IMG/VR virus record: IMGVR_UViG_3300009093_000034
Coordinates: 1-64,000 of that record
Direction: 5' to 3' (one strand)
DNA length: 64,000 bases
The position numbers and the translations under genes were made by a program. Below the pieces are notes generated by a model. The model saw nothing but the letters and a program-made list of their open reading frames with translations, did not search any database and had not been told where the DNA came from. Positions 17,209 through 57,931 of the stretch are shown piece after piece (within the stretch, counting starts at the first letter, position 1; every line of letters begins with the position of its first letter).

Positions 17209-17247
17209 AATTTTCTCCTTAATTCTTTAGTATAAAAAGAAAAGTTA

Positions 17248-17258
17248 TGAGATATTGT
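17248..17258 (+). promoter_or_regulatory. TGAGATATTGT motif upstream of rIIA
   Basis: Exact copy of the recurring motif. Confidence 0.65.
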
Positions 17259-17288
17259 AGTCATACCTATCAGGAGTCCTATACTCGT

Positions 17289-19466
17289 ATGAAAGACCAT
17301 GTGATCACCGACAACGTCATTACAAACATGCCTTCGTCAGGTCGAAACTTTACCATCAAGGCATCGAGAAAATCCTTCCAGGTTTTGTCCAGCGGTCTTT
17401 ATGAAGACAAGATCAAGGCCATCATCAGGGAGATCTCTTGTAATGCTATCGATGCACACGTTGCCGGTGGACAAACAGAAAAGAGATTTCAGGTCCATCT
17501 TCCTACCAACTTTGAACCTTGGTTCTCGGTCAAAGACTTCGGTATCGGAATGGATGAAAACACCGTGAATGATGTTTTTACTTCTTATTTTACATCCACC
17601 AAAAGTACTTCCGATGATTACATCGGAGCTATGGGACTCGGTTCAAAGAGTCCCTTTTCTTACACGGACTCCTTTACTGTCACGTCAATCAAGGATGGGA
17701 TCAAGGTCAAGTTCGTAGCCGTTATCAACAATGAAGGCGTCCCTGATCTTCTTCCTCCTTTGGAGAATGGTCCCACGGATGAGCCTTCTGGAACGGAACT
17801 TTCCTTCCCTGTTGATACCACAGATTGTGAGACTTTTGCTGAAAAAGCTGTTAGAGTCTTCATGCACTTTGATGAAGATAAGCGTCCCGAGGTGAACACC
17901 AAGATCTATCACGACAAGCTTGCCTTCTTTGAACAGAAGTTTCAAAACTTCTACTCTGGAAAAGCAAAGAACTGGAAACTTTTCAGCATCAATAACTGGA
18001 ACATGCCTGATGGAACTTACCAAGGTTCCTGTGTATTCGTTCGAATGGGACAGATTTTGTATCCTTTCGCTGAAGATCGGATTCAGGATGACTTTATCCG
18101 AAAGACCCTTTCCAACCAGTATCAGATGGTTCTTGATGTTCCCATCGGAACCTGTGACGTTGCTCCTTCCCGTGAGAAGCTCAACTACGACGCCGAAACC
18201 ATCTCCAATGTCAACAGTCTTCTCAAAGACGCAGTCGATGAGATGATGAGCATCTTCGACGAAGATCTTAAGACTAAGACTCTTTGGGAACAGGTTTCGT
18301 TCCTTCGGGACAAGAGAACCAAGTCAAATCACCCTGCCATCGTAGCTCTTCTTCACATGCCTGAAAGGGAGAAGTTCATCACCTCTTCTACCGGCATCGG
18401 TGTGAAGATGCTCAACGCAAGCGAACAGTGGAGACCTGTGAACTCCGTCATGGCCTACAACAGAAAGACCAGAAATGATGGGTCTGTTCAACTTGGACGA
18501 AATGTGAACGCGTTCTCTGTTTATCCTGGTTCAGAAACCGTGGTAATGGACTTAACCGTTGACTTCTTAGTCAAGGGAAACAAGAAACCTCCGAAGACTC
18601 TTCCAGTTCCTCTTAGAGGAAGTCTTCGTGCTTACCTCGCCCAGAATCCTGGGGTCGAGAACATCATCACAGTTGTTAACGGCGACCAGACCGTCTTTGA
18701 CGAGATGGGAAACCCTCCTACGATCAAAGGTTCTGACCTTCCTAAGCCTCTTAAGACTACTTACGTCAAGAGGATCAAGGGTGGAAAGGACAAACCTTCA
18801 GTTGACGTTTGGGGAAGTCCAATTGAACAGGCTGTCATCGACGATGCAGATGAGATCGTAGTTCTTGAGTGGAATACTACCACTCGCAGAATGGTGGTTG
18901 GAAACACGACTTGGAAACTTGGTGACTTCAGCGGTATGAACAACATGTTTCGGGATGTTGCTCATGTCACGAAATTGAAGACGATCTTCACTCGTAGAAC
19001 CACCTTGGAGATTGAAAAGGATGCCAAAAATCCTGTCAAGAATCCTAAAGTTCTGACTTACACTGAATGGGTTAACAAACACTATGACAGTGTTTACAAG
19101 GTTCTTGAGATCGCTTATGGTGAATCTAGAAATAGTACCATCCGAAATTCTTGGATTGGTAAGATGGTTTTTGAAAACTTGGTCGTTGCTAACTCTCACC
19201 CCATCTTGATGGCCATCAAGAACATGGATGATTCTCAGATCACCAAAAGAAACAACAACATCCATGGCCTGACCATGATCTTGAATAACTCAAACCTGAA
19301 GCTTCCTGAGGATTATCAGCCCAAGATCCTTGAACAATTGGAAAACATTCTTCCCTTGCTTCATGTAGCTTCCAGAACACTTTACAGTGTGAGCATTTCT
19401 GTTGCTCAAGACATCGCTGCTTACATCAGATCCAAGAAGGATCAATTAGATACTTTGACTTTGTAA
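17289..19466 (+). CDS. rIIA: rIIA-like protein (GHKL ATPase N-terminus)
   Basis: IIREISCNAIDAH, VKDFGIGM, STKSTSDDYIGAMGLGSKSPF, GTELSFPV, VAPSREKLNYD; start moved to 17289 because of the AGGAG RBS and the promoter motif over 17247. Confidence 0.85.
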   Translation: MKDHVITDNVITNMPSSGRNFTIKASRKSFQVLSSGLYEDKIKAIIREISCNAIDAHVAGGQTEKRFQVHLPTNFEPWFSVKDFGIGMDENTVNDVFTSYFTSTKSTSDDYIGAMGLGSKSPFSYTDSFTVTSIKDGIKVKFVAVINNEGVPDLLPPLENGPTDEPSGTELSFPVDTTDCETFAEKAVRVFMHFDEDKRPEVNTKIYHDKLAFFEQKFQNFYSGKAKNWKLFSINNWNMPDGTYQGSCVFVRMGQILYPFAEDRIQDDFIRKTLSNQYQMVLDVPIGTCDVAPSREKLNYDAETISNVNSLLKDAVDEMMSIFDEDLKTKTLWEQVSFLRDKRTKSNHPAIVALLHMPEREKFITSSTGIGVKMLNASEQWRPVNSVMAYNRKTRNDGSVQLGRNVNAFSVYPGSETVVMDLTVDFLVKGNKKPPKTLPVPLRGSLRAYLAQNPGVENIITVVNGDQTVFDEMGNPPTIKGSDLPKPLKTTYVKRIKGGKDKPSVDVWGSPIEQAVIDDADEIVVLEWNTTTRRMVVGNTTWKLGDFSGMNNMFRDVAHVTKLKTIFTRRTTLEIEKDAKNPVKNPKVLTYTEWVNKHYDSVYKVLEIAYGESRNSTIRNSWIGKMVFENLVVANSHPILMAIKNMDDSQITKRNNNIHGLTMILNNSNLKLPEDYQPKILEQLENILPLLHVASRTLYSVSISVAQDIAAYIRSKKDQLDTLTL

Positions 19467-22011: not shown

Positions 22012-23693
22012 TACTTGTAAGCTCCAGCCTTTCCTAAGAGTCCTTGACCTTCGAACTCGTCCTTGTATGCTTTGAAAGCATACTGATCAAGTTCCTTGAG
22101 CCAAGCGTCATCGATCTCGTAGTACATGTTGTCAAGGCGATCTAACCATTTGTGATCTAGCTCACCTTCTTTGGCGTCTTCTTCTAATTGACCTTCTTCG
22201 TTACAATCATAGCAAGGAGCAGTTCCTTCACCGTGGCATTCTTCACAGTCGACTTGATCGATGTTTCCATCTTCGTCCTCGTCTTCAACTGTTCCTTCAC
22301 CATCGCATTCTGGACACTTTACATATCTTTTGTTGTGGCAAGAGTAACATTCTTCATGAACACCTTGAACAACATCAGCAATACTTTCAAAAATAGTGAA
22401 AACCTTTACTCCAGTATCGGTCTTAAAGATACCTTCTCTAGAAGCTAGTTCTAACATCTGGTCTTGAAGATCTGTGTCATAAGAGTTGTTGCTAAAGTAT
22501 CCTCGTTTCTCAGAGGCATACCCGTTATCAAGATACTGCATGATTCCACCATTACCGATCTGGTAGTTAGCAGCTCCAAAGAACACAACAATTGCTGCTT
22601 CATCTCCATAGGTATGTAGAATGTACTCAATGAACTCTCCCCAACTCTTGTCTTTAGCAGGACCGTTGTCTTGCCAATCTTCGTAACAAATGTCCATAAT
22701 GGTCTGGAGGAAGCCGTGTTCTTCACCACTCTTTGGGGTTGCCTTTAATTTAGAGACAAGGTTTTGGGTGATCTTTTCTTGAAGTCTTTTATCGTTCATG
22801 TTTGTTCCTTTTGTGGATTCTTCAAAATCTTCATTCAAAAACTCATTAGGATTCACTGCATTCAAGAAGTCTTGAGCCAAAAGAGTTGCTGCAGAATGAA
22901 CAATGCTTGCGTGGTCTTTTGCTAAGTGCCATCTTTTAGCATCTTCAATGAAAGAAACAATGGTTTCTAAGCTCACCATATTGTTGATCCAATTTCTAGT
23001 TTTGTCTTGGTTGTAGTCATCTTCTGAAAGAAGTTCAACTGCGTCATCAATAACTTCATCGACAATTTCATCATGCTCATGTCTAAATGAAGATTCTTCA
23101 AATCTAGTCTCGTGTTCAAAATCTTCAATCATGTCTTTTGGATCATTTAAGACTTCAAGAACTACTTCAGATAGCTCATCTGCATCAGACATGTTAGTAA
23201 TTCTTTCTACATAACTTTTAACAAAACGATCCAAACTCTTAGAGTTTTTAACCTTAGTTTTGTTTTTTATGATCATCTTGAAAACTTTTTTAACGTTTCT
23301 AATGATGTCGGCCATGTAGTTATTCCACTCATCATTCCATTCATTTACATCGTCTTCGTCTTGCTCAAAGTCCATGTTTTCAATTTTTCTTTCATGAGAC
23401 TTAAAGGCTTCGAGATCATCCTTAAGGGACTCGATAGCTATTTTGTCCAAGTTAGGTTGCATTCCGCCTCTAGCCTGCATAAGGTTCACCATAGAGTCGG
23501 AACCAAGTGATTCTGAAAGGAGATTAGAAAGAAGAGAATCTAAGGTGTTAAGTGCTTCATGAGCCTTGAAACCATGTACAAACATAGCCTTTCTTTGCGC
23601 GTCAGCTTTCTTCTTTGAACGGAATTTGTGTGGATGTTTTGGAGGATTATCTCCAACATTTTCGTAGCCACCGTCAACTTTCTCTGTGCCCAT
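22011..23693 (-). CDS. Acidic multi-domain protein with DMP19/DUF4375-like domain and DnaJ-type Zn finger
   Basis: ANYQIGNGGIMQYLDNG; four CxxCx(G)x(G)-type repeats; LDRLDNMYYE; ACTAATT motif and AAGGAG RBS upstream. Confidence 0.65.
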   Translation of the reverse strand: MGTEKVDGGYENVGDNPPKHPHKFRSKKKADAQRKAMFVHGFKAHEALNTLDSLLSNLLSESLGSDSMVNLMQARGGMQPNLDKIAIESLKDDLEAFKSHERKIENMDFEQDEDDVNEWNDEWNNYMADIIRNVKKVFKMIIKNKTKVKNSKSLDRFVKSYVERITNMSDADELSEVVLEVLNDPKDMIEDFEHETRFEESSFRHEHDEIVDEVIDDAVELLSEDDYNQDKTRNWINNMVSLETIVSFIEDAKRWHLAKDHASIVHSAATLLAQDFLNAVNPNEFLNEDFEESTKGTNMNDKRLQEKITQNLVSKLKATPKSGEEHGFLQTIMDICYEDWQDNGPAKDKSWGEFIEYILHTYGDEAAIVVFFGAANYQIGNGGIMQYLDNGYASEKRGYFSNNSYDTDLQDQMLELASREGIFKTDTGVKVFTIFESIADVVQGVHEECYSCHNKRYVKCPECDGEGTVEDEDEDGNIDQVDCEECHGEGTAPCYDCNEEGQLEEDAKEGELDHKWLDRLDNMYYEIDDAWLKELDQYAFKAYKDEFEGQGLLGKAGAYK

Positions 23694-23853
23694 TAGTGCC
23701 TATCTCCTTGCCAATGGTGAATTAGTACTTCAGATTCGTATATTATTAGAATCCGTAAATTGTGCAAAATCAGAAAAATCTAATCTAGAATTTTGGAATT
23801 TTGCACTCCACAAAACACTAATTAAGACTCGTGCACAGGAGCAAAAGTTCACC

Positions 23854-26178
23854 ATGCTGATCACCAAAAAAGATGGTTCTAACCAGCCTTTTGATGAGAA
23901 CAAGGTTCTCAAAACCCTCAAGATAAGATCTGAGGGACTATCTGGAGTTAATCAAGATAAAATTTTCAAAGAGTTCACCAAGAACATCGCCGAAGGAATC
24001 TCAACGTCTGACCTAGAGAAGATGCTGATCCTTTCCGCGTCTTCATTGGCTGAAACTCACTTGGATTATGACAAGCTTGCCACTAGACTCTTCCTTCAGA
24101 AGATCTACAAAGAGGTTCTTGGCGGAACAGCTTCAGATGAAGAAAGAGACTCTGCTCACAAGCACGCTTTCATCCATTTCATTGACTCCTCTCCTCTTCT
24201 TGACGATAGAATGAGAAACTGCTTCGACTTGGTCAGACTCTCCAATGCTCTTGATCTTGAACAAGACAAGAGGTTCAACTTCCTTGGTCTCACAAGCATC
24301 TACGAGAAGCTTCTCATTCGTGATGAAAACGGCTTCGTCAAAGAAACTCCACAGATGTTTTTCATGCGCGTCGCTATGGGTCTTTGTCTTGAAGACGTGG
24401 ATGATTTCGTCCTTGATCTTTACGGGATCTACTCTCGTCATGAAGCCATCAGTTCAACCCCAACTCTCTTTGCTTCCGGCTTGAAGAAGGCTCAATTGTC
24501 TTCTTGTGCTGGTGGAGTCGTTACCGATACCACGGAGTCCATCTTCGGAACAGCTGAAGACTCTTTCAATCTTGGTAAGTGGAGCTATGGAATCGGTACC
24601 TCTGTTTCCAAGCTTCGTGCCATCGGAAGCACAGTTAAGTCCACAAGAATCCAATCCAGCGGAATCATCCCATTCCTTCAGATATACAACGCCATCTGTA
24701 ACTCGGTCAATCGAGGAGGTCGTAAGAGAGGAGCCATGTGCTTCTACCTTGAGAACTGGCACTATGAGACTGAGGACTTCATCAAGCTTCGCAGAAACTC
24801 TGGTGATGAGAGAATGAGAACCCACGATCTCAACACCGCTCTTTTCATCTCTGATGAGTTCATGAAGAGAGTTATGAGAGACGAGCAATGGATGCTCATC
24901 GATCCTAAGGAAGCCATTGACAACGGTTACGACCTCACAGAGCTCTCTGGAAGAGCTTTCTCTCAAGCCTACAAAGAACTTGAGAACCTAGCTAAGGCCG
25001 GTAAGATCAAGCTCTTCAAGTTCATCAAGGCTAAGGACCTTTGGAAGCAACAGCTCCTTAGCCTCTTCGAGACCGGACACCCTTGGGTCACGTTCAAGGA
25101 TGCTATGAACGTCAGGAACCCAAACCAGAACTCAGGAAACATCTACTCCAGCAACCTCTGTACAGAGATCGCTCAGAACGTTCTTCCAGATGCCTCGGGA
25201 GCAGGAGAGTATTTCAACTGTTTCTTGGCTTCTGCTAACCTCGGTGAGATGTTTCATCCAGAGACCCAGTTCGATGTTGAGAAACTTACCCACGCTGTTC
25301 GAATCTTGGTACGAGCTTTGGACAATGCAAATGATTTGAACTATTACCCCACAGAAGGTGTAAGAGCCGGTTCACAACGATACCGTTCTATCGGTGTTGG
25401 AGTTATGGGATGGCAAGACCTTCTATTTAAGAACAAGATTCCTTTTGATTCTCCTGAAGCTGTTGATCTTCTTGATCGAGTAGCTGAGGTTTGGAGTTAC
25501 GCTGCAATTGATGCTTCTGCGGCTCTTGCTGTTGAAAGAGGAAGTTACCAGAACTTTGAAGGAAGTCTTTGGAGTCAAGGAATTCTTCCAGTTGACACCT
25601 TGGCCATGCTCTCAGAGTCAAGAGACCTTCCATTGACCGTAGAGTCAACCACTCGTCTGGATTGGGACGTCTTGAGAGAGAAGGTAAAGAAGGGCATGAG
25701 AAACGGTTACGTTATGTCTCCTGCTCCTAACGCTTCCACCGCTCTTTACTTGGGAGTTTATCCAGCTACTGAGGCTCAATATGCCAACATGTACTCCAAG
25801 GAGAACATGCTCGGTAAGTTCTCTATCATCAACGAGTATCTTGTAGATGATCTAGCTAAACTAGAGGGAATTGACGTTGAAGAAGTAGTTCAGAAGATCA
25901 AGAACTCTCGAGGAGATCTAGCAAAAGCTGGAATCAAGGACGAGAAGATCCTTGAGCTTTACAGAAATGCTTTTGAGGTAGATCCATTGGCACAGGTCGA
26001 ACAAGCCAAGGTGCTTGCTAAGTGGATCGACCAATCACACTCCAGGAACATCTTCCTGGACACAAACAGTGGCAAGGTCTTGAATGATGTGTATCTTCAA
26101 GGTTGGTTGGGAGGTGTTAAGACCTTCTACTACTTGAGATCCAAGGCCGCCACATCAGCAGAGAACTCGACAGAATAA
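23854..26178 (+). CDS. nrdA: Class Ia ribonucleotide reductase alpha subunit with ATP-cone
   Basis: ITKKDG cone, TPQMFFMRVA, STPTLF, QLSSC, GGRKRGA, SSNLCTEI, NCFLASANL, PAPNAS, KTFYYLRS; the likely start is ATG 23854, not 23686. Confidence 0.95.
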   Translation: MLITKKDGSNQPFDENKVLKTLKIRSEGLSGVNQDKIFKEFTKNIAEGISTSDLEKMLILSASSLAETHLDYDKLATRLFLQKIYKEVLGGTASDEERDSAHKHAFIHFIDSSPLLDDRMRNCFDLVRLSNALDLEQDKRFNFLGLTSIYEKLLIRDENGFVKETPQMFFMRVAMGLCLEDVDDFVLDLYGIYSRHEAISSTPTLFASGLKKAQLSSCAGGVVTDTTESIFGTAEDSFNLGKWSYGIGTSVSKLRAIGSTVKSTRIQSSGIIPFLQIYNAICNSVNRGGRKRGAMCFYLENWHYETEDFIKLRRNSGDERMRTHDLNTALFISDEFMKRVMRDEQWMLIDPKEAIDNGYDLTELSGRAFSQAYKELENLAKAGKIKLFKFIKAKDLWKQQLLSLFETGHPWVTFKDAMNVRNPNQNSGNIYSSNLCTEIAQNVLPDASGAGEYFNCFLASANLGEMFHPETQFDVEKLTHAVRILVRALDNANDLNYYPTEGVRAGSQRYRSIGVGVMGWQDLLFKNKIPFDSPEAVDLLDRVAEVWSYAAIDASAALAVERGSYQNFEGSLWSQGILPVDTLAMLSESRDLPLTVESTTRLDWDVLREKVKKGMRNGYVMSPAPNASTALYLGVYPATEAQYANMYSKENMLGKFSIINEYLVDDLAKLEGIDVEEVVQKIKNSRGDLAKAGIKDEKILELYRNAFEVDPLAQVEQAKVLAKWIDQSHSRNIFLDTNSGKVLNDVYLQGWLGGVKTFYYLRSKAATSAENSTE

Positions 26179-37714: not shown

Positions 37715-37946
37715 AATAGAAGAGTTTTTATCTTTTTCGAAAGCTGCTACTAACTTATCAGGATTAGCGATACTAACTAAATCGTAAGCTAATAATTCGG
37801 CTTTATATGCCGAGAATTGATAATGGGATACCTTAAACTGCCCAACAACGGATCTGTCAACAACATATGGACAACGAGAATTGCCGGATGTGCTTCGAGT
37901 CACTTTTACTCAGACGTTTTTACAATACACGCAAAAGGAAAACATT

Positions 37947-39725
37947 ATGTCAGGTGGAATCACCGGAAGAATGAACAGCGAATTGCGCGAAGCTATCACT
38001 GATAAGCTTTACCGCGATGAGCGCTCCTACCGCGACGACAAGCTCGTTGAAAAGTGGAACAGAATTCCCGAGGTAGGAAAGAATATTAAGAAGCTCGACG
38101 AAGGAACCGCAAGGCTCTTGGCTCGTCACTTGGAAAACCAAGCTCGCTTCATGGGTCGCTTGACTGAGGCCCAACTCTCTAGCGGATTCCAGGGTTTCTC
38201 CCCTGAGAACATGCTTCGTTTGGTTCGTTTGGCATACCCAAACACCATCAGAAACAAGCTCTTCACCGAGTTCGCAATGGAATCCGCAAAGGACTCCATC
38301 AAGTATATCCGCCCTGTCTACACCACCACCGCTAACGGTCAGAACTTGAACGATCGTACCTTCGGTGTTCCTGGTTGGTCAAACGCTGGCGATGCCTACG
38401 ATCCTGCCGATCCTTGGAACCTTAACGGTTCGAACGACATCAACAACAGCGACTACCGCAGAGCAATGTACGAAACCAACGAAGATCGTTACACCAACCC
38501 AATGGCTAACGCTCTTGTTGCAACTTTCGACGGAACTCACACTTGGACCGTTTACGACTCTGTTAAGGCAGTTCAGACGTTCTCTGCCGTTACCGACACA
38601 TCAGCTGTTGCTAACGTTGGTGGAACCACTCTAACCCTTAACACCACCGGAACTTGGGTCATCTATGGTACTCTTACCATCGGTACCACCCACGCCGCAG
38701 TCGGTTCTTCTGCCTTCTCTCTCGGCTACGTCGATGGATACGCTTCTCTCTTCACTGCAGCAGACAGCTATCCTCCTTCCGCCGGAACTGGTTGGCACCT
38801 TCAGGAGCAGAACGTCATCGCTACTCAGAACAAGACTGGCGCTGCTCTCTCCGTTAACGGATCTTGGATGATCAAGTCTGGATCCACTCTCACCATCACC
38901 GCAACCTCCCTCGTTGGTGTGTTCGCTCTCGGTGGTGCAGATGCCGCAAACGTCCGCGGTGGTTATGGCCGTTTTAACCCAGAAGGTGACTTCCAGGGTA
39001 ACTTCCTTGGTGAAGTTGAGTTGATCATGACCGACTACTGGTTCAGACCACAGCCAACTACCATTGGTGTTACGTGGAGCCAGTTGACCGAGCTTGTTCT
39101 CGACACCTCCTTCGGAGTTGCCGCTGAGGAGCTCTTGGTTGACTACGCTGGCCAGGAAATCAAGAGATCTCTCGACGTTCGCGCCGTAAAGATCGCTTAC
39201 CAAGCCGCCAAGATGAACCCAAGCTACTACACGATCACCTTTGATGCATCCTCTGGAAATAGCACGGACGACTCTTACCTCTCTACCGCTCAGACCTTCA
39301 CTCAGGCTATCGCCCGTGTTGCAGACGTTCAATTGAACGATATCAACCGTGGTGGAGTTAGCCGAATGGTTGGTGGACCTGCAGCAATGACTTACCTCCG
39401 CATGGTCGGTGGTTTCTCTGCTAAGGGCCAGATGACCCCAGTCGGTGGTCACCAGATTGGAGAGCTTCAGGGCATTCCATTGTTCAAGGTTCCTTCTAAC
39501 GTCATCCCTGATGACGAGATCCTTTGTGTTTGGAAGAACGACGAGAACGAGGCAGACGTTGCAGTTGCCTTCGGTACCTTGGTTCCTTTCTTCAGCACTG
39601 GTATCATCCAGAGGAAGAACTTCTACAAGGAAGCAGGTCTTTCGACCTACGGTGACTGGAACGTTCTAAACAGACGTTACCTTGGTCTTATCAAGATCAC
39701 CGGTCTCCGCCAGCTCCAGAACTAA
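37947..39725 (+). CDS. Major capsid protein (T4 gp23-like, HK97 fold) with large Thr/Gly-rich insertion
   Basis: LVEKWNRIP, LENQ, LTE-AQ maturation-like site, MLRLVRLAYPN, GEVELIM, QEIKRSLD, strong codon bias, followed by a terminator; likely start is ATG 37947 (AAGGAA RBS). Confidence 0.9.
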   Translation: MSGGITGRMNSELREAITDKLYRDERSYRDDKLVEKWNRIPEVGKNIKKLDEGTARLLARHLENQARFMGRLTEAQLSSGFQGFSPENMLRLVRLAYPNTIRNKLFTEFAMESAKDSIKYIRPVYTTTANGQNLNDRTFGVPGWSNAGDAYDPADPWNLNGSNDINNSDYRRAMYETNEDRYTNPMANALVATFDGTHTWTVYDSVKAVQTFSAVTDTSAVANVGGTTLTLNTTGTWVIYGTLTIGTTHAAVGSSAFSLGYVDGYASLFTAADSYPPSAGTGWHLQEQNVIATQNKTGAALSVNGSWMIKSGSTLTITATSLVGVFALGGADAANVRGGYGRFNPEGDFQGNFLGEVELIMTDYWFRPQPTTIGVTWSQLTELVLDTSFGVAAEELLVDYAGQEIKRSLDVRAVKIAYQAAKMNPSYYTITFDASSGNSTDDSYLSTAQTFTQAIARVADVQLNDINRGGVSRMVGGPAAMTYLRMVGGFSAKGQMTPVGGHQIGELQGIPLFKVPSNVIPDDEILCVWKNDENEADVAVAFGTLVPFFSTGIIQRKNFYKEAGLSTYGDWNVLNRRYLGLIKITGLRQLQN

Positions 39726-52477: not shown

Positions 52478-53125
52478 ATGAGATTTACTATGAAAAAGCT
52501 ATTCATCACAGTGATGATCTCTCTTTTCTTGTGGGGTTGTACGGTAACCAAGACCGTTGAGGTCTCTCCTACACCTACACCAGATCCTATCGCAGTACAA
52601 CCTCCAACTTTCATTCCTCAAACCATCGAGATGCCCTTGGAGTTTCAACTTCCCATGAAGGACCCTATCGTTACAAGCCGTTTTGGATATCGAAATGACT
52701 TGAAGAAAGGTCCAATGGGTGGTGGAGACTCTATTCACATGGGACTCGACATGATCCCGAAGAATAGAAAGTTGATCCATGCTCCTATCTTGGCAGCAGC
52801 GGATGGAGAGGTTGTTATTGTTTATCCTCCTCCGAGCAAGAAGTTCAAAGGTCATGTCGTTTTTGGTGGTTGTATTCAGATCAAGAGTGACTCCGGCTGG
52901 AGAACCAAGTCTGGAAAGATCATTTGGGCGTACACCTTGTACGGACACATGAGTGATGTTTGGATGACAGAAGGCACCATGGTCAAAGCTGGTCAAGTCA
53001 TAGGTCTGATGGGAAACACAGGACAAGCTGAAGGCTATCACCTCCACTTCGAGGTCTCATTTGACCCTGAAGACTTTCTTCCAGAGCTTGATGCTCTTCC
53101 TACTCTACGAAAGGCTCAAGACTAA
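52478..53125 (+). CDS. M23 family peptidase, predicted lipoprotein
   Basis: Lipobox LWGC; VTSRFGYR, HMGLDM (HxxxD), YGHMS, GQVIGLMGNTG, YHLHFEV. Confidence 0.9.
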   Translation: MRFTMKKLFITVMISLFLWGCTVTKTVEVSPTPTPDPIAVQPPTFIPQTIEMPLEFQLPMKDPIVTSRFGYRNDLKKGPMGGGDSIHMGLDMIPKNRKLIHAPILAAADGEVVIVYPPPSKKFKGHVVFGGCIQIKSDSGWRTKSGKIIWAYTLYGHMSDVWMTEGTMVKAGQVIGLMGNTGQAEGYHLHFEVSFDPEDFLPELDALPTLRKAQD

Positions 53126-54412: not shown

Positions 54413-54675
54413 GTGGTCCAGCTCCAAAGCATGGACAACCTACCCACCATGAAGCTGTTCATCACGTTTATCTTACTGTAGAACAGATGGAGAAGATGAC
54501 AACTCAACGTCTTCTAGCTTACTTCAAGAAACACTTGATGCATGATCCATTCTATCCTTCCAGTGAAAAAGAAAAACATGACGAGTGGGAGATGGTTAGA
54601 GCTAAAGCTCAAAGTATACTATCAAGTAGAGAACATGTTCCTTCTAAGAGGGAACTCCAAAAGAGAAAGAAATGA
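54409..54675 (+). CDS. Hypothetical protein
   Basis: ATGA coupling. Confidence 0.65.
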   Translation: MSGPAPKHGQPTHHEAVHHVYLTVEQMEKMTTQRLLAYFKKHLMHDPFYPSSEKEKHDEWEMVRAKAQSILSSREHVPSKRELQKRKK

Positions 54676-55094
54676 CACGATACGTTTTAGGTTTTCTTTT
54701 TGATGACGAAAAGAACACGGTCGTCTTGATCAAGAAAAACAAGCCTGTTTGGCAAAAAGGTCTCTTGAACGGTGTTGGTGGGAAGATCGAAGAAGGTGAA
54801 CTTCCTATAGTCGCTATGGTAAGAGAGTTTGAAGAGGAAACGTCTGTGAAAACAGACAACCTTGATTGGAAGCACTTTGCTGGTGTTGAAGGCGAAGGTT
54901 ACTCCATCGCTTGTTTCTACACCATCAGTTCTGACTACATGAAAAACGTCAAGACCATGGAAGAAGAAGTGATCGAGATTCGTAGGATTCGAGATCTTCA
55001 AGATCTTCCTATAGTCTCCAATCTTCTTTGGTTGGTTCACCTTGCAAAAGATGAAAACAATGGTAACCATCCTACTGTTCAAGTAAAGTACTAA
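54672..55094 (+). CDS. Nudix hydrolase
   Basis: LNGVGGKIEEGELPIVAMVREFEEETSV (Nudix box). Confidence 0.9.
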   Translation: MTRYVLGFLFDDEKNTVVLIKKNKPVWQKGLLNGVGGKIEEGELPIVAMVREFEEETSVKTDNLDWKHFAGVEGEGYSIACFYTISSDYMKNVKTMEEEVIEIRRIRDLQDLPIVSNLLWLVHLAKDENNGNHPTVQVKY

Positions 55095-55128
55095 ATGACT
55101 GTTATTCTTCTGTGTGTACTAATTGTAC

Positions 55129-55590
55129 ATGAGAAGAACCTATAGAATAGAAAAGTCTTTAGATATTGAGGAGTTCATTAGAATAACTAATGAATCGTTA
55201 ACCATGAAACAAGCTGCTGTGAAACTTGGTCTTCATTTTAATAGTTTCAGAAGAATAGCAGTAAAGTATGGAGTTTATCGACCTAATCGTGGAGGCAAAG
55301 GAACCCATAAGCATAAAGAAAATGGGACTACACCTCTTACTGAAATTTTGGAAGGAAACCATCCATCATATCAAACGTTTAGATTAAAACTTAGATTAAT
55401 TTCAGAAGGAATTTTTATTCCAGAATGTTCTGAATGCAAAAATACTCAATGGAATAAAAAAGAAATTCCTTTAGAGTTAGATCACATAGATGGAAATTCT
55501 TCTAACCATCTTTTAGACAACTTACGATTGTTATGTCCAAATTGTCATGCACAAACTGAGACGTATAGAGGAAAAAACAAAAAGTTTTGA
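55129..55590 (+). CDS. HNH endonuclease (homing-type)
   Basis: CSECKN...LELDHIDGNSSNHLLDNLRLLCPNCHAQT; AT-rich; ACTAATT-N4-ATG. Confidence 0.9.
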   Translation: MRRTYRIEKSLDIEEFIRITNESLTMKQAAVKLGLHFNSFRRIAVKYGVYRPNRGGKGTHKHKENGTTPLTEILEGNHPSYQTFRLKLRLISEGIFIPECSECKNTQWNKKEIPLELDHIDGNSSNHLLDNLRLLCPNCHAQTETYRGKNKKF

Positions 55591-55769: not shown

Positions 55770-56222
55770 ATGAGTTATCTCACTGCTACTACTCAGGACA
55801 TTCAGGACGTCGCTAAGACCCTGATTTATGCCACTGACAAGACCACGTCCCGCGACATTCTGGAGAAGATGCGCGCCGACAATTACTGGATCAACCAGAC
55901 CGAGGTCGCTGCTGCGCTTCGTGATCTTCTGGCCACGGATCCTTCCTACGTTCGGACCTTTCAGCCCGATGCCTCGGTTCCTACCGGTGGCTACTTCATC
56001 TACGGCCTTGCGAGCGTGATCAAGACCACGGCCTCTGCCCCTGTCTACCCTGCGAAGGTGAAGAAGGTTCAGACTGTTGGTGACTACGAAGCTCGTGACA
56101 AGAACGATCCCAACTGGACCCTCGTTCGTTACGACAACGTCACCGAGAACCAGGCCAAGCATCTCTTCTCCGAAGAGTACGGCGTCGCCTACACTGACGT
56201 TCGCGTCAAGAAGGCTGTCTAA
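55770..56222 (+). CDS. Hypothetical protein, two-domain
   Basis: GAGGAGG RBS, strong codon bias; C-terminal module shared with the ORF at 1..1029. Confidence 0.8.
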   Translation: MSYLTATTQDIQDVAKTLIYATDKTTSRDILEKMRADNYWINQTEVAAALRDLLATDPSYVRTFQPDASVPTGGYFIYGLASVIKTTASAPVYPAKVKKVQTVGDYEARDKNDPNWTLVRYDNVTENQAKHLFSEEYGVAYTDVRVKKAV

Positions 56223-56261
56223 GAAAAAAGTTTCTCTTGAAAAGAGAGGCTGAGATATTGT

Positions 56262-56370
56262 ATACGTAATGACCTAGAGCTTGAGCATAGGTTAAGCCAA
56301 ACGGTAAAGTAAAGGCCGCCAAATAGCAAAAGGGAGGGTTTCTATCTTCTAAAGATCTAAACCACTATAT
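56262..56370 (+). ncRNA. Candidate small structured RNA
   Basis: Lies between the TGAGATATTGT motif (56251) and a terminator-like hairpin (approx. 56398-56430); no ORF; stems ACCTA/TAGGT and GGTTT..ATCTT/AAGAT..AAACC. Confidence 0.35.
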
Positions 56371-56397
56371 TTTGTTTTTTTAATAGATTGTTTTTCG

Positions 56398-56430
56398 AAA
56401 AGGGAACCTGTTGGTTCCCTTTTCCTTTTT
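56398..56430 (+). terminator. Terminator-like hairpin
   Basis: AAAAGGGAAC-CTGTTG-GTTCCCTTTT. Confidence 0.75.
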
Positions 56431-56440
56431 GTGAAGAGAA

Positions 56441-56451
56441 TGAGATATTGT
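56441..56451 (+). promoter_or_regulatory. TGAGATATTGT motif upstream of PARP
   Basis: Exact motif. Confidence 0.65.
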
Positions 56452-56480
56452 AGACAACTTATAGTTCATGGAGACTACAG

Positions 56481-57692
56481 ATGGCCCGTATTGAAAAGCT
56501 GATCATGGTGACCGGTGAAGAGAATCACAACAAGGTCTATGAGCTGATCGACAACGAGAACGGTACTTGTACCGCCAAGTGGGGTCGGGTTGGCGCTGCT
56601 CTTCAGGAGTGCAACTACCCCATCAGCGAGTTTGAAAAGAAGCTCAAGGAAAAGGTCAAGAAGGGCTATCGCGTGATCACCGATCTTCTGTCTGTCGAGA
56701 AAAGTGATGGTAAGACCACCACTACGGACGACGAAGAGGTAAAGATCCAGAACATGTCCCGTGAGGCCATGGAGTTGATCAACTTCCTCCAGAGTTGTGC
56801 TAAGGGCATCGTCAAGCAGAACTACACCGTCAAAGTTGCCGACGTTACTCAGAAGCAGATCGACGCTGCTCAGGCCATCCTGGACGGACTGGTTGCTCTG
56901 TCCAACCAGAACTGGTCTCGTGAAGAGGCCAACAAGATCCTTTTGGATCTTTACAACACCATCCCCCGGAAGATGAGCAACACCAAGAACTTCCTCATCC
57001 AGATCGACAACATCACGAAGAAGCGCCTTCAGGAGTTGATCTCCAGTGAAGCCGATCTTCTTGACGTTATGCGCGGTCAGGTTCAGACCACGAACGTTGC
57101 TCCCAAGTCTTCCACTGGCGAAGTCAAGTTGGATATTGAGATTCGTCTCGCTACTCCCGATGAGATCGATGAGATCTCCAAGAAGACTGACTTTGATGTT
57201 CGTAGTGCTGCAAGGATCTATCGGGTGGAGAACACCAAGACCAAGAATCGCTACGAAAGTATCAACAAGCAGAATGAACAGCTTCTCTACCACGGTTCTC
57301 GCAGCCAGAACTGGTGGTCGATCATCAACGGCGGTTTGAAGATTCGTCCGACCAACGCCGTTCACACTGGCTCGATGTTCTCCGATGGTATCTACGCTGC
57401 TGACAAAGCTCAGAAGTCTCTCGGTTACACCGACGGTGGTTATTGGACTGGTAGCAGTGGTTCCTCGAAGAGGTTCCTCGGCATCTACAGTTTCAACCTC
57501 GGTCGTCAGTGGGATCTGTTCGCTGGTGGTCAGCGTCATGCCAGCTGGATGATGCAGCTCAACCTGAAGAAGATCAACGACAAGGGTTTTGACTCTCTGT
57601 TCGCTAAGGGTGGAGCAGATCTTCGCAACAATGAGATGATCGTGTTCGAAGAGGCTCGCTGCACCATCAAGTATCTGATCGAGATGCGTTAA
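56481..57692 (+). CDS. Poly(ADP-ribose) polymerase-like ADP-ribosyltransferase (WGR + regulatory + catalytic)
   Basis: NHNKVY...AKWGRVG (WGR); LYNTIPRK (regulatory); LLYHGS, GSMFSDGIYAADKAQKSLGY, NNEMIVF...KYLIEM (H-Y-E triad). Confidence 0.92.
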   Translation: MARIEKLIMVTGEENHNKVYELIDNENGTCTAKWGRVGAALQECNYPISEFEKKLKEKVKKGYRVITDLLSVEKSDGKTTTTDDEEVKIQNMSREAMELINFLQSCAKGIVKQNYTVKVADVTQKQIDAAQAILDGLVALSNQNWSREEANKILLDLYNTIPRKMSNTKNFLIQIDNITKKRLQELISSEADLLDVMRGQVQTTNVAPKSSTGEVKLDIEIRLATPDEIDEISKKTDFDVRSAARIYRVENTKTKNRYESINKQNEQLLYHGSRSQNWWSIINGGLKIRPTNAVHTGSMFSDGIYAADKAQKSLGYTDGGYWTGSSGSSKRFLGIYSFNLGRQWDLFAGGQRHASWMMQLNLKKINDKGFDSLFAKGGADLRNNEMIVFEEARCTIKYLIEMR

Positions 57693-57694
57693 CC

Positions 57695-57931
57695 ATGTCA
57701 AAGTTTGAGATCTCCATCGAAGCTGGTCTCCTTATGAAAGGTCAGGTTAGACGTCTCCTTGAAAAAACCAAGAGAGATCTTCTTTGGAACAATCCTCAAG
57801 CTTACGTTGAGATCTACGAAGAATCATACTTTCTTGAATCTGAATTTACCTTCAGGGTCAAGAACATCAACGAAGTCGAACGTCTTGCTCTTCTGAAGTA
57901 TTTTCAGAAGATCGACCAGGAGACCTTATGA
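57695..57931 (+). CDS. Hypothetical protein
   Basis: Packed array. Confidence 0.7.
   Translation: MSKFEISIEAGLLMKGQVRRLLEKTKRDLLWNNPQAYVEIYEESYFLESEFTFRVKNINEVERLALLKYFQKIDQETL

What the first reader, a model, noticed from the sequence alone, without database searches (positions are those of the whole stretch)
56481..57692. Phage-encoded PARP with WGR and regulatory domains and an intact H-Y-E triad
Seen: WGR, regulatory (NTIPRK) and catalytic domains in PARP1/2/3 order, with motifs closely matching PARP1 LLWHGS, GYMFGKGIYFAD and YNEYIVY. It has its own early-type promoter motif; a Nudix hydrolase lies 1.4 kb upstream; no PARG or macrodomain is recognisable in the window. Known: WGR plus regulatory domains confer DNA-break-dependent activation, the catalytic Glu is associated with chain elongation, and T4 Alt/Mod are mono-ARTs of a different class. 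Inference: a break-activated ADP-ribosyltransferase that may shield or flag phage DNA ends, modify host defence or repair proteins, or deplete NAD+.
Basis: partly seen in the sequence, partly recalled or inferred. Interest (0 to 1): 0.7.

Follow-up and report, generated by a model that had tools for sequence, protein, structure and literature searches.

The report
Jumbo-phage PARP with winged-helix partner
A soil jumbo phage carries an intact, selected PARP enzyme like those that sense DNA breaks in animal cells, and the small gene beside it proves to be a previously undescribed partner that accompanies this PARP in many phages and Bacteroidota bacteria.

Summary
Window 56481-57692 (+) encodes a 403-aa PARP with WGR, helical regulatory and ART domains in PARP1/2/3 order. 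H271, Y305 and E385 are invariant in 48 relatives. The model (pLDDT 87.6) matches the PARP1 and PARP2 WGR-HD-ART chains on DNA breaks over its whole length. The gene lies in a complete 305.8-kb jumbo phage from rhizosphere soil and is under purifying selection: 11 of 11 strain differences are synonymous.

Phage PARPs were already catalogued by sequence (Perina 2014; Iyer 2021), so the enzyme itself is a new member of a known kind.

The new element is the upstream 150-aa ORF (55770-56222), a winged-helix protein with no Pfam model. It is a dedicated PARP partner.
- It neighbours the PARP in 43 of 78 bacterial loci and 14 of 47 viral groups, in either gene order.
- In 401 genomes of one phylum, exactly the same 4 carry both genes, adjacent.

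A sister PARP clade instead has a TARG1-like macrodomain gene next to the PARP.

Related phages place the PARP among ligase and replication genes. This phage also encodes NAD+ salvage enzymes and a separate Alt-type mono-ART.

Most likely function: a nick- or break-activated ADP-ribosyltransferase in phage DNA metabolism, working with the partner. Activity, product and targets are untested.

The parts
56481..57692 (+). PARP gene, 403 aa. Approximate domains: WGR residues 1-65 (nt 56481-56675); low-confidence linker 66-93; helical regulatory domain 94-205 (nt 56760-57095); ART domain 219-403 (nt 57135-57689). Catalytic codons: H271 at 57291-57293, Y305 at 57393-57395, E385 at 57633-57635.
   Evidence: (PHROG 23333, E 6.9e-49, near full length). 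Intact in two independent samples, and 11 of 11 strain differences are synonymous.
55770..56222 (+). Partner gene, 150 aa (working label c10). N-terminal winged-helix domain (residues 1-80) and a small C-terminal alpha/beta domain (104-148). No Pfam, PHROG or PADLOC model.
   Evidence: Model pLDDT 90.6. Only fold-level winged-helix matches. Near the PARP in 14 of 47 viral groups and 43 of 78 bacterial loci. Exact co-occurrence in 4 of 401 genomes. Fused to WGR in long forms. Cellulophaga phage phi4:1 gp030 is a member.
56441..56452 (+). Promoter-like phage motif TGAGATATTGTA, 29 nt before the PARP start codon, followed by GGAG at 56470-56473.
   Evidence: 8 matches in the window against 1.1 expected. 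39 genome-wide, 38 on the + strand, mostly intergenic before start codons. Also precedes rIIA, the ATP-dependent DNA ligase, the CCA-adding enzyme, a SprT-like protein and a transglycosylase. Function as a promoter is inferred.
56397..56424 (+). Intrinsic-terminator-like hairpin (12-bp stem, 4-nt loop, then a T-run) separating the partner gene from the PARP promoter motif.
56251..56262 (+). Second copy of the TGAGATATTGTA motif, just after the partner gene's stop codon. With the terminator it brackets an ORF-free stretch of about 170 nt.
   Evidence: Fold z-score -2.76. No Rfam family. Status as an RNA gene is unproven.
54672..55094 (+). Nudix hydrolase, 140 aa, MutT-like. Context only; a link to the PARP is not shown.
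   Evidence: Pfam E 6.7e-11. NCBIfam best matches are MutT, far below their cut-offs. One of three Nudix genes in the genome.
55123..55590 (+). HNH endonuclease, 155 aa, lying between the Nudix and the partner gene. Probably a mobile homing-type insertion; context only.
   Evidence: Pfam HNH 22.0 bits against a cut-off of 21.4.

Best explanation
The gene encodes a minimal PARP2/3-like enzyme made only of WGR, helical (HD) and ART domains. It is expressed from a phage-specific promoter of the early or middle class.

By homology, the WGR domain binds a nick or break in double-stranded DNA. [quoted passage not shown]

The enzyme works with a dedicated small winged-helix protein encoded next to it. 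That protein most likely acts as a DNA-targeting or regulatory subunit, or as the main acceptor.

The pair acts in phage DNA replication, recombination or repair, marking or protecting nicks and ends until they are sealed. The phage's own NAD+ salvage genes make up for the NAD+ consumed.

Shown: the domain architecture, intact catalytic and NAD+-site residues, purifying selection, the conserved partner, and the replication/ligase context in related phages.

Inferred: DNA dependence, the product (mono- or poly-ADP-ribose), the targets, physical contact with the partner, and the timing of expression.
For: Architecture and catalytic site.

The WGR residues used by PARP2 at nicks are conserved or invariant (PMC6294510). 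Minimal bacterial PARPs are active, and Herpetosiphon PARP is DNA-dependent (PMC8120803).

Selection: the frame is intact in two samples and 11 of 11 differences are synonymous.

Partner:
- 43 of 78 bacterial loci, nearly always immediately downstream, while in this window it is immediately upstream.
- 14 of 47 viral groups.
- It is the only conserved neighbour in otherwise variable bacterial contexts.
- It is single-copy, and the same 4 of 401 genomes carry both genes.
- Some forms are fused to a WGR domain.

DNA-metabolism context:
- A DNA ligase lies within 8 kb in 15 of 47 viral groups, and any ligase in 23.
- Pol III alpha, ERCC4 and RNR lie nearby.
- Cellulophaga phage phi4:1 has the gene order CCA-adding enzyme, PARP, partner, DNA ligase.
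- In this phage the same promoter-like motif precedes the PARP, the DNA ligase, the CCA-adding enzyme and rIIA.

The phage has a separate Alt-type ART available for host takeover, and NAD+ salvage genes.
Against: - There is no biochemical evidence for any phage PARP.
- The WGR is short, about 65 aa. Its equivalence to PARP2's 5'-phosphate-binding Y201 (Y63 here) is not resolved by the alignment.
- PARP1 Y986 is Asn here, so polymer formation is uncertain.
- In this phage the DNA ligase is about 240 kb away rather than adjacent.
- No eraser gene is adjacent. The only macrodomain is a weakly matched Poa1p/DarG-like type 20 kb away and may serve RNA repair instead.
- A two-gene cassette in variable bacterial contexts equally fits a conflict or toxin-antidote system.
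- No RNA run was listed, so there is no expression evidence.
Confidence: 0.5

Rival explanations
1. The PARP is the toxic or effector half of a mobile two-gene conflict cassette. When triggered, it depletes NAD+ or ADP-ribosylates DNA or proteins. The neighbour restrains it. In one clade the neighbour is a TARG1-like macrodomain that reverses the modification. In this clade it is the winged-helix protein, acting as an inhibitor or autoregulator. In a phage the cassette would serve superinfection exclusion, competition between phages, or counter-defence.
For: - In bacteria, only the PARP and its partner are conserved in otherwise variable neighbourhoods.
- The cassette is sporadic, present in 4 of 401 genomes.
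- The two partner types are mutually exclusive and follow the PARP tree. No group has both, and the two clades each have SH-aLRT support of 95. Swapping in an unrelated antidote is a pattern seen in toxin-antitoxin systems (general knowledge).
- The PARP-adjacent macrodomain matches the PADLOC DarG model (3.9e-15) and TARG1 (1e-27).
Against: - Neither the PARP nor the partner matches any PADLOC model.
- The complete DNA-sensing WGR-HD apparatus is retained.
- Phage copies sit among replication and ligase genes rather than in accessory islands.
- The phage invests in NAD+ salvage.
- In this window a terminator and a separate promoter motif lie between the two genes, which does not fit tight co-translation.
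Confidence: 0.2
2. The PARP is a host-takeover or anti-defence effector. It ADP-ribosylates host proteins such as RNA polymerase, translation factors, nucleases or defence proteins. Host DNA breakdown early in infection may serve as its activating signal.
For: - Iyer et al. suggested that phage PARPs act like Alt/Mod but add chains (PMC7824862).
- The promoter motif is shared with rIIA, an early gene in T4.
- Host DNA ends would be abundant in a lytic infection (inference).
Against: - The phage already has an Alt/Mod-type ART.
- The same PARP-partner pair is conserved in bacterial chromosomes, where host takeover has no meaning.
- The linkage to ligase and replication genes points to nucleic-acid metabolism.
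Confidence: 0.15
3. The PARP caps DNA ends. Its main substrate is the terminal 5' or 3' phosphate of phage DNA, as PARP2 and PARP3 do in vitro. Capping would protect genome ends or replication intermediates from host exonucleases, or prepare ends for ligation.
For: - PARP1-3 ADP-ribosylate phosphorylated DNA ends in vitro, the modification blocks phosphatase, and TARG1 reverses the PARP3-type modification (PMC8385414).
- The sister clade pairs the PARP with a TARG1-like macrodomain.
- Ligase genes are linked to the PARP.
- The genome has direct terminal repeats, which implies linear ends.
Against: - DNA ADP-ribosylation by PARPs has not been established in vivo (PMC8385414).
- No TARG1-type eraser accompanies this clade.
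- Nothing in the sequence distinguishes DNA acceptors from protein acceptors.
Confidence: 0.12
4. The gene is a decaying or functionless passenger recently captured from a bacterium.
For: A near-identical contig (L005) carries a 1-nt deletion in a GGG run that shifts the frame.
Against: - The frame is intact in the source sample and in an independent 2024 soil sample that spans the GGG run.
- 11 of 11 differences are synonymous.
- All catalytic and NAD+-site residues are intact.
- The nearest relatives are viral, and bacterial matches reach at most 43% identity.
Confidence: 0.02

Closest known systems
Human PARP2 and PARP3 (and the WGR-HD-ART core of PARP1)
   Same: Same domain order and fold: Foldseek E about 5e-20 to PARP1 and PARP2 on DNA breaks, and profile E about 1e-29. 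The H-Y-E triad is present, along with the NAD+-site residues corresponding to G863, S904, Y907 and K903. The WGR nick-contact residues N-x-N-K, W-G-R and Q are present.
   Different: - No N-terminal region, zinc fingers or BRCT domain.
- The WGR is about 65 aa and lacks the eukaryotic insertion.
- The ART is about 185 aa against about 225.
- PARP1 Y986 is Asn here and Y889 is Ser.
- Identity is only about 20-22%.
- The partner is a winged-helix protein rather than HPF1, PARG or XRCC1.
Bacterial PARPs of Herpetosiphon aurantiacus and Clostridioides difficile CD160, and the Cytophagales/Clostridiales 'Clade 1' of Garcia-Saura et al. 2018 (PMC5966428)
   Same: Minimal WGR-helical-ART proteins of about 400 aa. 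Pfam often misses the regulatory domain although models show it. HaPARP is DNA-dependent and both enzymes make PAR in vitro (PMC8120803). The window's relatives in genomes are Saprospiraceae, Cytophagales and Clostridia.
   Different: The characterised enzymes pair with a PARG. This clade has no PARG and pairs with the winged-helix protein instead. Identity to bacterial genome copies is only 30-43%, and the window's copy lies in a largely viral subclade.
Annotated phage PARPs: Cellulophaga phages phi4:1 and phi17:2, Xanthomonas phage XacN1 (BBA65562.1), Klebsiella phage FBKp34; PHROG 23333
   Same: Same family: PHROG E 6.9e-49, and tblastn 23-36% identity over 96-100% of the length. Phi4:1 also has the partner gene directly after its PARP.
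   Different: These are catalogued only by sequence (Perina 2014; Iyer 2021), with no function tested. XacN1 and FBKp34 have no detectable partner gene. FBKp34 has a macro-like gene 2.4 kb upstream instead.
T4 Alt, ModA and ModB
   Same: Phage-encoded NAD+-dependent ADP-ribosyltransferases.
   Different: They are R-S-E class mono-ARTs without WGR or HD domains. This phage has its own member of that class elsewhere in the genome.
DarT-DarG
   Same: A two-gene pairing of an ART with a macrodomain that reverses its modification. The PARP-adjacent macrodomains of the sister clade match DarG and TARG1.
   Different: DarT is not a PARP and targets thymidine in single-stranded DNA. The window's clade has no adjacent macrodomain. 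Neither the PARP nor the partner matches a PADLOC model.

Membership tests
DNA-dependent PARPs (clade 1: PARP1/2/3-like) | ART fold with the H-Y-E triad and NAD+-site residues | tested here: met
   Pfam PF00644 E 4.5e-22. H271, Y305 and E385 are invariant in 48 relatives, as are G272, K312, S313 and Y316. These align to PARP1 H862, Y896 and E988.
DNA-dependent PARPs (clade 1: PARP1/2/3-like) | Helical regulatory (HD) domain immediately N-terminal to the ART | tested here: met
   Pfam PF02877 gives no hit. However, PARP1's HD aligns to residues 96-243, the profile reaches E about 1e-29, and the model has helices at 94-205 with full-length Foldseek matches.
DNA-dependent PARPs (clade 1: PARP1/2/3-like) | WGR domain | tested here: met
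   Pfam WGR scores 17.9 bits, below the cut-off of 22. The profile aligns the NNNK and WGRVG motifs to PARP2 and PARP1. The model has four strands and a helix at residues 4-60. Several relatives pass the Pfam WGR threshold.
DNA-dependent PARPs (clade 1: PARP1/2/3-like) | Catalytic activation by DNA nicks or breaks | not testable with these tools
   Inferred from conserved WGR contact residues and from the DNA dependence of HaPARP (PMC8120803; PMC6294510).
Poly(ADP-ribose) polymerases in the strict sense | Chain elongation, not only mono-ADP-ribosylation | not testable with these tools
   E385 and K312 are present, but PARP1 Y986 is N383 here. PARP3 and PARP4 also carry H-Y-E yet are named mono-transferases.
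Phage PARP family PHROG 23333 | Full-length match to the family profile | tested here: met
   E 6.9e-49, residues 11-403 matched to profile positions 12-383 of 383.
Reversible PAR system (PARP with PARG or a macrodomain eraser) | A PARG or ADP-ribosyl hydrolase encoded with the PARP | tested here: inconclusive
   No PARG of either type is found in the genome. ARH scores only 13.9 bits. One macrodomain gene lies 20 kb away, weakly Poa1p/DarG-like. None is adjacent, unlike in the sister clade.
T4 Alt/Mod-type ARTs (R-S-E) | ADPrib_exo_Tox-type catalytic domain | tested here: not met
   The PARP gives no such hit. The genome's PF03496 match is a different gene at 114194-114826.
Tpt1/KptA RNA 2'-phosphotransferase | Match above the family threshold | tested here: not met
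   18.7 bits against a cut-off of 26 over 43 residues of the shared ART core. NCBIfam gives 20.2 bits against a cut-off of 231.
Known anti-phage defence systems (PADLOC 2.0) | Match of the PARP or its partner to a defence-system model | tested here: not met
   No hits for either protein or for bacterial forms of the partner.

The most novel reading that the evidence does not exclude
The PARP and the winged-helix protein form a previously undescribed two-component module shared by Bacteroidota and huge phages. The winged-helix protein takes the place that a TARG1-like eraser holds in the sister clade. It would act as the PARP's DNA-targeting subunit, as its ADP-ribosylation-controlled switch (a damage-responsive regulator), or as its antidote. 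Either way it would be a prokaryotic counterpart of the accessory factors that direct eukaryotic PARPs.
Probability: 0.35. Interest if true: 0.8.

Novelty: new variant of a known kind. Interest (0 to 1): 0.6.

Why it matters
PARP1-3 are central DNA-damage sensors and drug targets in animal cells, yet what their prokaryotic and viral relatives do is unknown. No phage PARP has been tested.

This locus shows that the minimal WGR-HD-ART enzyme is maintained by selection in huge phages. It also shows that the enzyme comes in two genetically distinct forms, one paired with a TARG1-like eraser and one with a dedicated winged-helix protein.

That gives the field a concrete two-protein system to reconstitute. 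A cultured model is available: Cellulophaga baltica phage phi4:1 gp031, gp030 and gp029.

Such work could show how DNA-break-coupled ADP-ribosylation operated before eukaryotes, whether it acts on DNA ends or on proteins, and how phages budget NAD+ while bacterial defences attack that same metabolite.

Tried and rejected
- **Complex prediction of PARP with the partner.** No verdict, score 0.00. It counts neither for nor against binding.
- **Near-identity search of the phage database with 6 kb around the gene.** No match.
- **RNA runs holding the gene.** None was listed, so there is no expression evidence.
- **Rfam on the intergenic region.** Only a sub-threshold SraG match at 19 bits against a gathering score of 50, which I rejected.
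- **Sigma-70 consensus scan.** Fewer sites than in shuffled sequence and none before the PARP, so the host-type promoter reading is rejected in favour of the phage motif.
- **N-terminal extension of the ~765-aa Microscilla-type PARPs.** I asked whether it is a fused partner domain. It is not: it is an all-alpha repeat with no similarity to the partner.
- **PADLOC for the PARP and the partner.** No hits.
- **Pfam, PHROG and NCBIfam for the partner and most small neighbours.** Nothing.
- **Structure search for the partner.** Only generic winged-helix matches, none at E <= 0.001.
- **First reading of the NAPRTase as NAMPT.** Corrected to PncB.
- **The phage's macrodomain as a dedicated PARP eraser.** Not accepted, because it is a different, weakly matched type and is not linked to the PARP gene.
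- **The 408-aa antisense ORF 56475..57701.** Rejected as a gene. All homology lies on the + frame, and all 11 strain differences are synonymous in that frame.
- **The frameshift in contig L005.** It could not be resolved further, because these runs are held only as contigs.
Full report

Yes. Window 56481..57692 (+) is an ATG-initiated ORF of 403 codons with GGAG 7 nt upstream.

Pfam finds the PARP catalytic domain (E 4.5e-22). WGR falls below its threshold (17.9 bits against a cut-off of 22), and the PARP regulatory model gives no hit. Three other lines of evidence recover the two weak domains.
- A single-sequence search of PDB chains aligns residues 58-317 to the helical and ART domains of human PARP1 (E 5.5e-14).
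- A profile of 48 family members aligns to PARP1 from position 16 and to PARP2 from position 12, through to about position 346, and again over the catalytic-Glu strand (LrndEyivY against LLYNEYIVY), at E about 1e-29.
- An AlphaFold model (pLDDT 87.6, pTM 0.83) has as its best Foldseek matches the WGR-HD-ART chains of PARP1 and PARP2 bound to DNA breaks (E about 5e-20, TMq up to 0.68, about 483 aligned columns).

H271, Y305 and E385 are invariant in the family. So are the counterparts of PARP1 G863, K903, S904 and Y907, the G-R-V of the WGR motif, and P162-R163 of the IPRK motif.

**2. What genome is it in?**

The window is the first 64 kb of a complete 305,833-bp IMG/VR virus record with direct terminal repeats. 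It is clearly a phage. The window holds an rIIA homologue (E 1e-110), a class I ribonucleotide reductase and a major-head-like protein. Public runs that hold the sequence are rhizosphere and soil metagenomes.

**3. Is the gene alive?**

A near-identical 111-kb contig (L005) differs from the gene at one position only. It lacks one G from a GGG run at about window 56804, which shifts the frame and explains two truncated gene calls in the protein databases.

The intact form is present in the source sample's contig. It is also present in an independent 2024 soil sample whose contig crosses that run without a gap. All 11 substitutions seen in contigs from two other samples are third-position and synonymous.

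The nearest relatives, at 53-58% identity, are viral or metagenomic. The best matches in bacterial and archaeal genomes are 30-43%. In a quick maximum-likelihood tree the window's protein sits in a largely viral subclade.

The 408-aa antisense ORF that overlaps the gene is an artefact.

**4. How common and how well known is it?**

The family is large.
- 2,683 cluster representatives at E <= 0.001, of which 388 are at E <= 1e-30.
- 271 IMG/VR contigs.
- PHROG 23333 covers nearly its full length.

Homologues are already annotated as PARP in Cellulophaga phages phi4:1 and phi17:2, Xanthomonas phage XacN1 and Klebsiella phage FBKp34. Perina et al. 2014 (PMC4245714) and Iyer et al. 2021 (PMC7824862) list phage PARPs, and the latter suggests they act like Alt/Mod but add chains.

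I found no experimental study of any phage PARP. Two minimal bacterial PARPs are active in vitro, and the Herpetosiphon enzyme needs DNA (PMC8120803). The enzyme as such is therefore a new member of a known kind.

**5. The neighbour is a dedicated partner**

The 150-aa ORF at 55770..56222, 259 nt upstream, has no Pfam, PHROG or PADLOC match. Its model (pLDDT 90.6) shows a winged-helix domain (residues 1-80) and a small alpha/beta domain (104-148). Structure searches return only generic winged-helix folds such as PadR, TFE-alpha and Z-alpha.

An HMM of this family (working label c10) gives the following.
- It finds the family within 8 kb of the PARP in 14 of 47 dereplicated viral PARP groups, adjacent in 4.
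- It finds the family in 43 of 78 PARP loci from bacterial genomes. These are mostly Saprospiraceae, Cytophagales and other Bacteroidota. There it lies almost always immediately downstream on the same strand.
- In those bacterial loci nothing else around the PARP is conserved.
- In two large genomes the family has a single copy, the one beside the PARP.
- In 401 genomes sampled across that phylum, the c10 profile hits four genomes and the PARP profile hits exactly the same four. In each, the two genes are 21-239 nt apart on one strand.

The chance of that overlap under independence is about 1e-9. The four genomes may be related, so this is not a true probability.

Gene order differs between this phage (upstream) and the bacteria (downstream), yet the linkage is kept. 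Long forms of the partner carry a WGR domain of their own (Pfam 25.8 bits).

The short bacterial forms end in a conserved FSxN tail. Phage forms have a different conserved C-terminal module. This phage has a second, unlinked member of the family at 195333-196109.

**6. Two kinds of PARP module**

The tree splits into two clades, each with SH-aLRT support of 95 (quick search, midpoint root).
- In one clade (34 rows; Clostridia, Treponema, Absconditabacterales and their phages), 23 have a macrodomain gene abutting the PARP upstream, often overlapping it by a few bases. That macrodomain is a full-length homologue of human TARG1/OARD1 (E 1e-27) and matches the PADLOC DarG model.
- In the other clade (87 rows), 54 have c10 and none has an adjacent macrodomain.
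- No group has both partners.

The window belongs to the second clade.

The phage's only macrodomain gene (77202-77753, outside the window) is a different type. It matches Poa1p-like ADP-ribose-1''-phosphatases and DarG only weakly. It may belong with the phage's RNA-repair genes: three RNA ligases and a CCA-adding enzyme.

**7. Context that bears on function**

In related phages the PARP lies among DNA replication and repair genes.
- A DNA ligase (ATP- or NAD+-dependent) lies within 8 kb in 15 of 47 groups, and any ligase in 23.
- Pol III alpha, an ERCC4 nuclease and anaerobic RNR are also nearby.
- Cellulophaga phage phi4:1 has the contiguous order CCA-adding enzyme (gp032), PARP (gp031), c10 member (gp030; E 3.7e-16), ATP-dependent DNA ligase (gp029).

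In the window's phage these genes are dispersed, but they share an upstream motif, TGAGATATTGTA.
- 8 matches in the window against 1.1 expected.
- 39 matches genome-wide, 38 on the + strand, mostly intergenic and 6-40 nt before start codons.
- It precedes the PARP (56441-56452), the ATP-dependent DNA ligase, the CCA-adding enzyme, a SprT-like protein, a transglycosylase and rIIA.

No transcript data exist. A strong terminator hairpin (56397-56424) separates the partner gene from the PARP's motif.

**8. NAD+ economy and other ARTs**

The phage encodes the following.
- A PncB-type nicotinate phosphoribosyltransferase, above the NCBIfam cut-offs.
- A 357-aa protein with a nucleotidyltransferase domain followed by Nudix, the NatV/NadM architecture.
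- Two further Nudix genes.
- A separate Alt/Mod-type ART (PF03496, 56.4 bits).

No PARG, convincing ARH or Tpt1 is present.

These findings argue against NAD+ depletion as the enzyme's purpose. They also reduce the need for the PARP as the host-takeover ART. The Nudix 1.4 kb upstream is MutT-like, matched only weakly.

**9. Most likely mechanism**

By homology, the WGR binds a nick or break. PARP2's essential contacts N127, N129, K130, W151, R153 and Q159 correspond to N15, N17, K18, W34, R36 and Q42 here. Most of these are invariant in the family (PMC6294510). Binding releases the helical domain's autoinhibition, and the H-Y-E site then transfers ADP-ribose.

Whether chains are made cannot be read from the sequence, because PARP1 Y986 is Asn here and PARP3 and PARP4 share the triad.

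Given the ligase and replication context and the DNA-binding-type partner, I favour a role in phage DNA replication, recombination or repair. The partner would be a targeting or regulatory subunit, or an acceptor. Confidence in the whole picture is about 0.5.

Confidence is much higher for some parts: about 0.95 that this is a functional PARP-family enzyme, and about 0.85 that c10 is its functional partner.

The main rival is a toxin-antidote-like conflict cassette. The variable bacterial contexts and the mutually exclusive partners make it a serious alternative. Host takeover and DNA-end capping remain possible.

**10. Verdict**

The enzyme belongs to a catalogued but untested phage and bacterial PARP family.

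The added value is the dedicated winged-helix partner, the two-clade partner dichotomy, and a cultured phage in which both can be tested.

Noticed in passing
window about 56804 (gene nt 324); L005:8324: A near-identical 111-kb contig from another assembly lacks one G of a GGG run in the PARP gene, which shifts the frame. Two truncated database gene calls (239 aa and 164 aa) derive from it. It is either an assembly error or a real knock-out variant. Two other samples carry the intact form.
   Followed up: partly
window 56475-57701 (-): A 408-aa ORF runs antisense across the whole PARP gene and is longer than the gene itself. A naive longest-ORF caller picks it. All homology and the synonymous-only variation lie on the + frame, so it is an artefact.
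   Followed up: yes
window 305, 17249, 27799, 42640, 43031, 47899, 56252, 56442; genome-wide in G000: The motif (T)GAGATATTGTA occurs 39 times in the genome with at most 1 mismatch, 38 times on the + strand, mostly 6-40 nt before start codons of non-structural genes. These include rIIA, DNA ligase, the CCA-adding enzyme, a SprT-like protein, a transglycosylase and the PARP. It is probably a phage-specific promoter. The polymerase or sigma factor that reads it is unknown.
   Followed up: partly
window 56263-56434 (+): A copy of the promoter-like motif is followed by about 170 nt without an ORF and then by a strong terminator hairpin. This could be a small RNA between the partner gene and the PARP. 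The fold z-score is -2.76, largely from the terminator. No Rfam family matches.
   Followed up: partly
G000:C1:114194-114826 (+), outside the window: A 210-aa Alt/Mod-type mono-ADP-ribosyltransferase (Pfam ADPrib_exo_Tox, 56.4 bits). The phage therefore carries two unrelated ART classes.
   Followed up: partly
G000:C1:261773-262969 and 236832-237905, outside the window: NAD+ salvage genes: a PncB-type nicotinate phosphoribosyltransferase and a NatV/NadM-like protein with nucleotidyltransferase and Nudix domains. The 178-aa ORF after PncB has no family match.
   Followed up: partly
G000:C1:77202-77753 (+), outside the window: The only macrodomain gene of the genome (183 aa). It is closest, weakly, to Poa1p-like ADP-ribose-1''-phosphatases and the DarG macrodomain. 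It may serve RNA repair alongside three RNA ligases (87121, 155937, 222433) and a CCA-adding enzyme (163354).
   Followed up: partly
L046:9276-10016, L068:6889-7596 and relatives: A family of about 240 aa with no Pfam match lies directly next to the PARP in 5 viral PARP groups that lack both c10 and a macrodomain. It may be a third alternative partner.
   Followed up: no
G000:C1:195333-196109 (-), outside the window: A second member of the c10 winged-helix family (258 aa, HMM E 2.6e-8) that is not linked to the PARP gene.
   Followed up: no
L118 (JBBACR010000001.1) and L059: A 425,361-bp contig filed as a 'Candidatus Pacearchaeota archaeon' MAG has the same length and the same PARP sequence as an IMG/VR viral contig. 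Some 'genome' PARP loci are therefore huge-phage contigs binned into MAGs, and taxon labels of short MAG contigs should be read with care.
   Followed up: partly
window 55123-55590 (+): An HNH endonuclease gene sits between the Nudix and the partner gene. It is probably a homing-type insertion, which may explain why the local gene order differs from related phages.
   Followed up: no
window 17247-19466, 23686-26178, 37881-39725, 52478-53125: An rIIA homologue (E 1e-110), the class I ribonucleotide reductase large subunit (E 1e-191), a weak major-head-protein match, and an M23 peptidase. These are ordinary phage genes that confirm the setting.
   Followed up: partly
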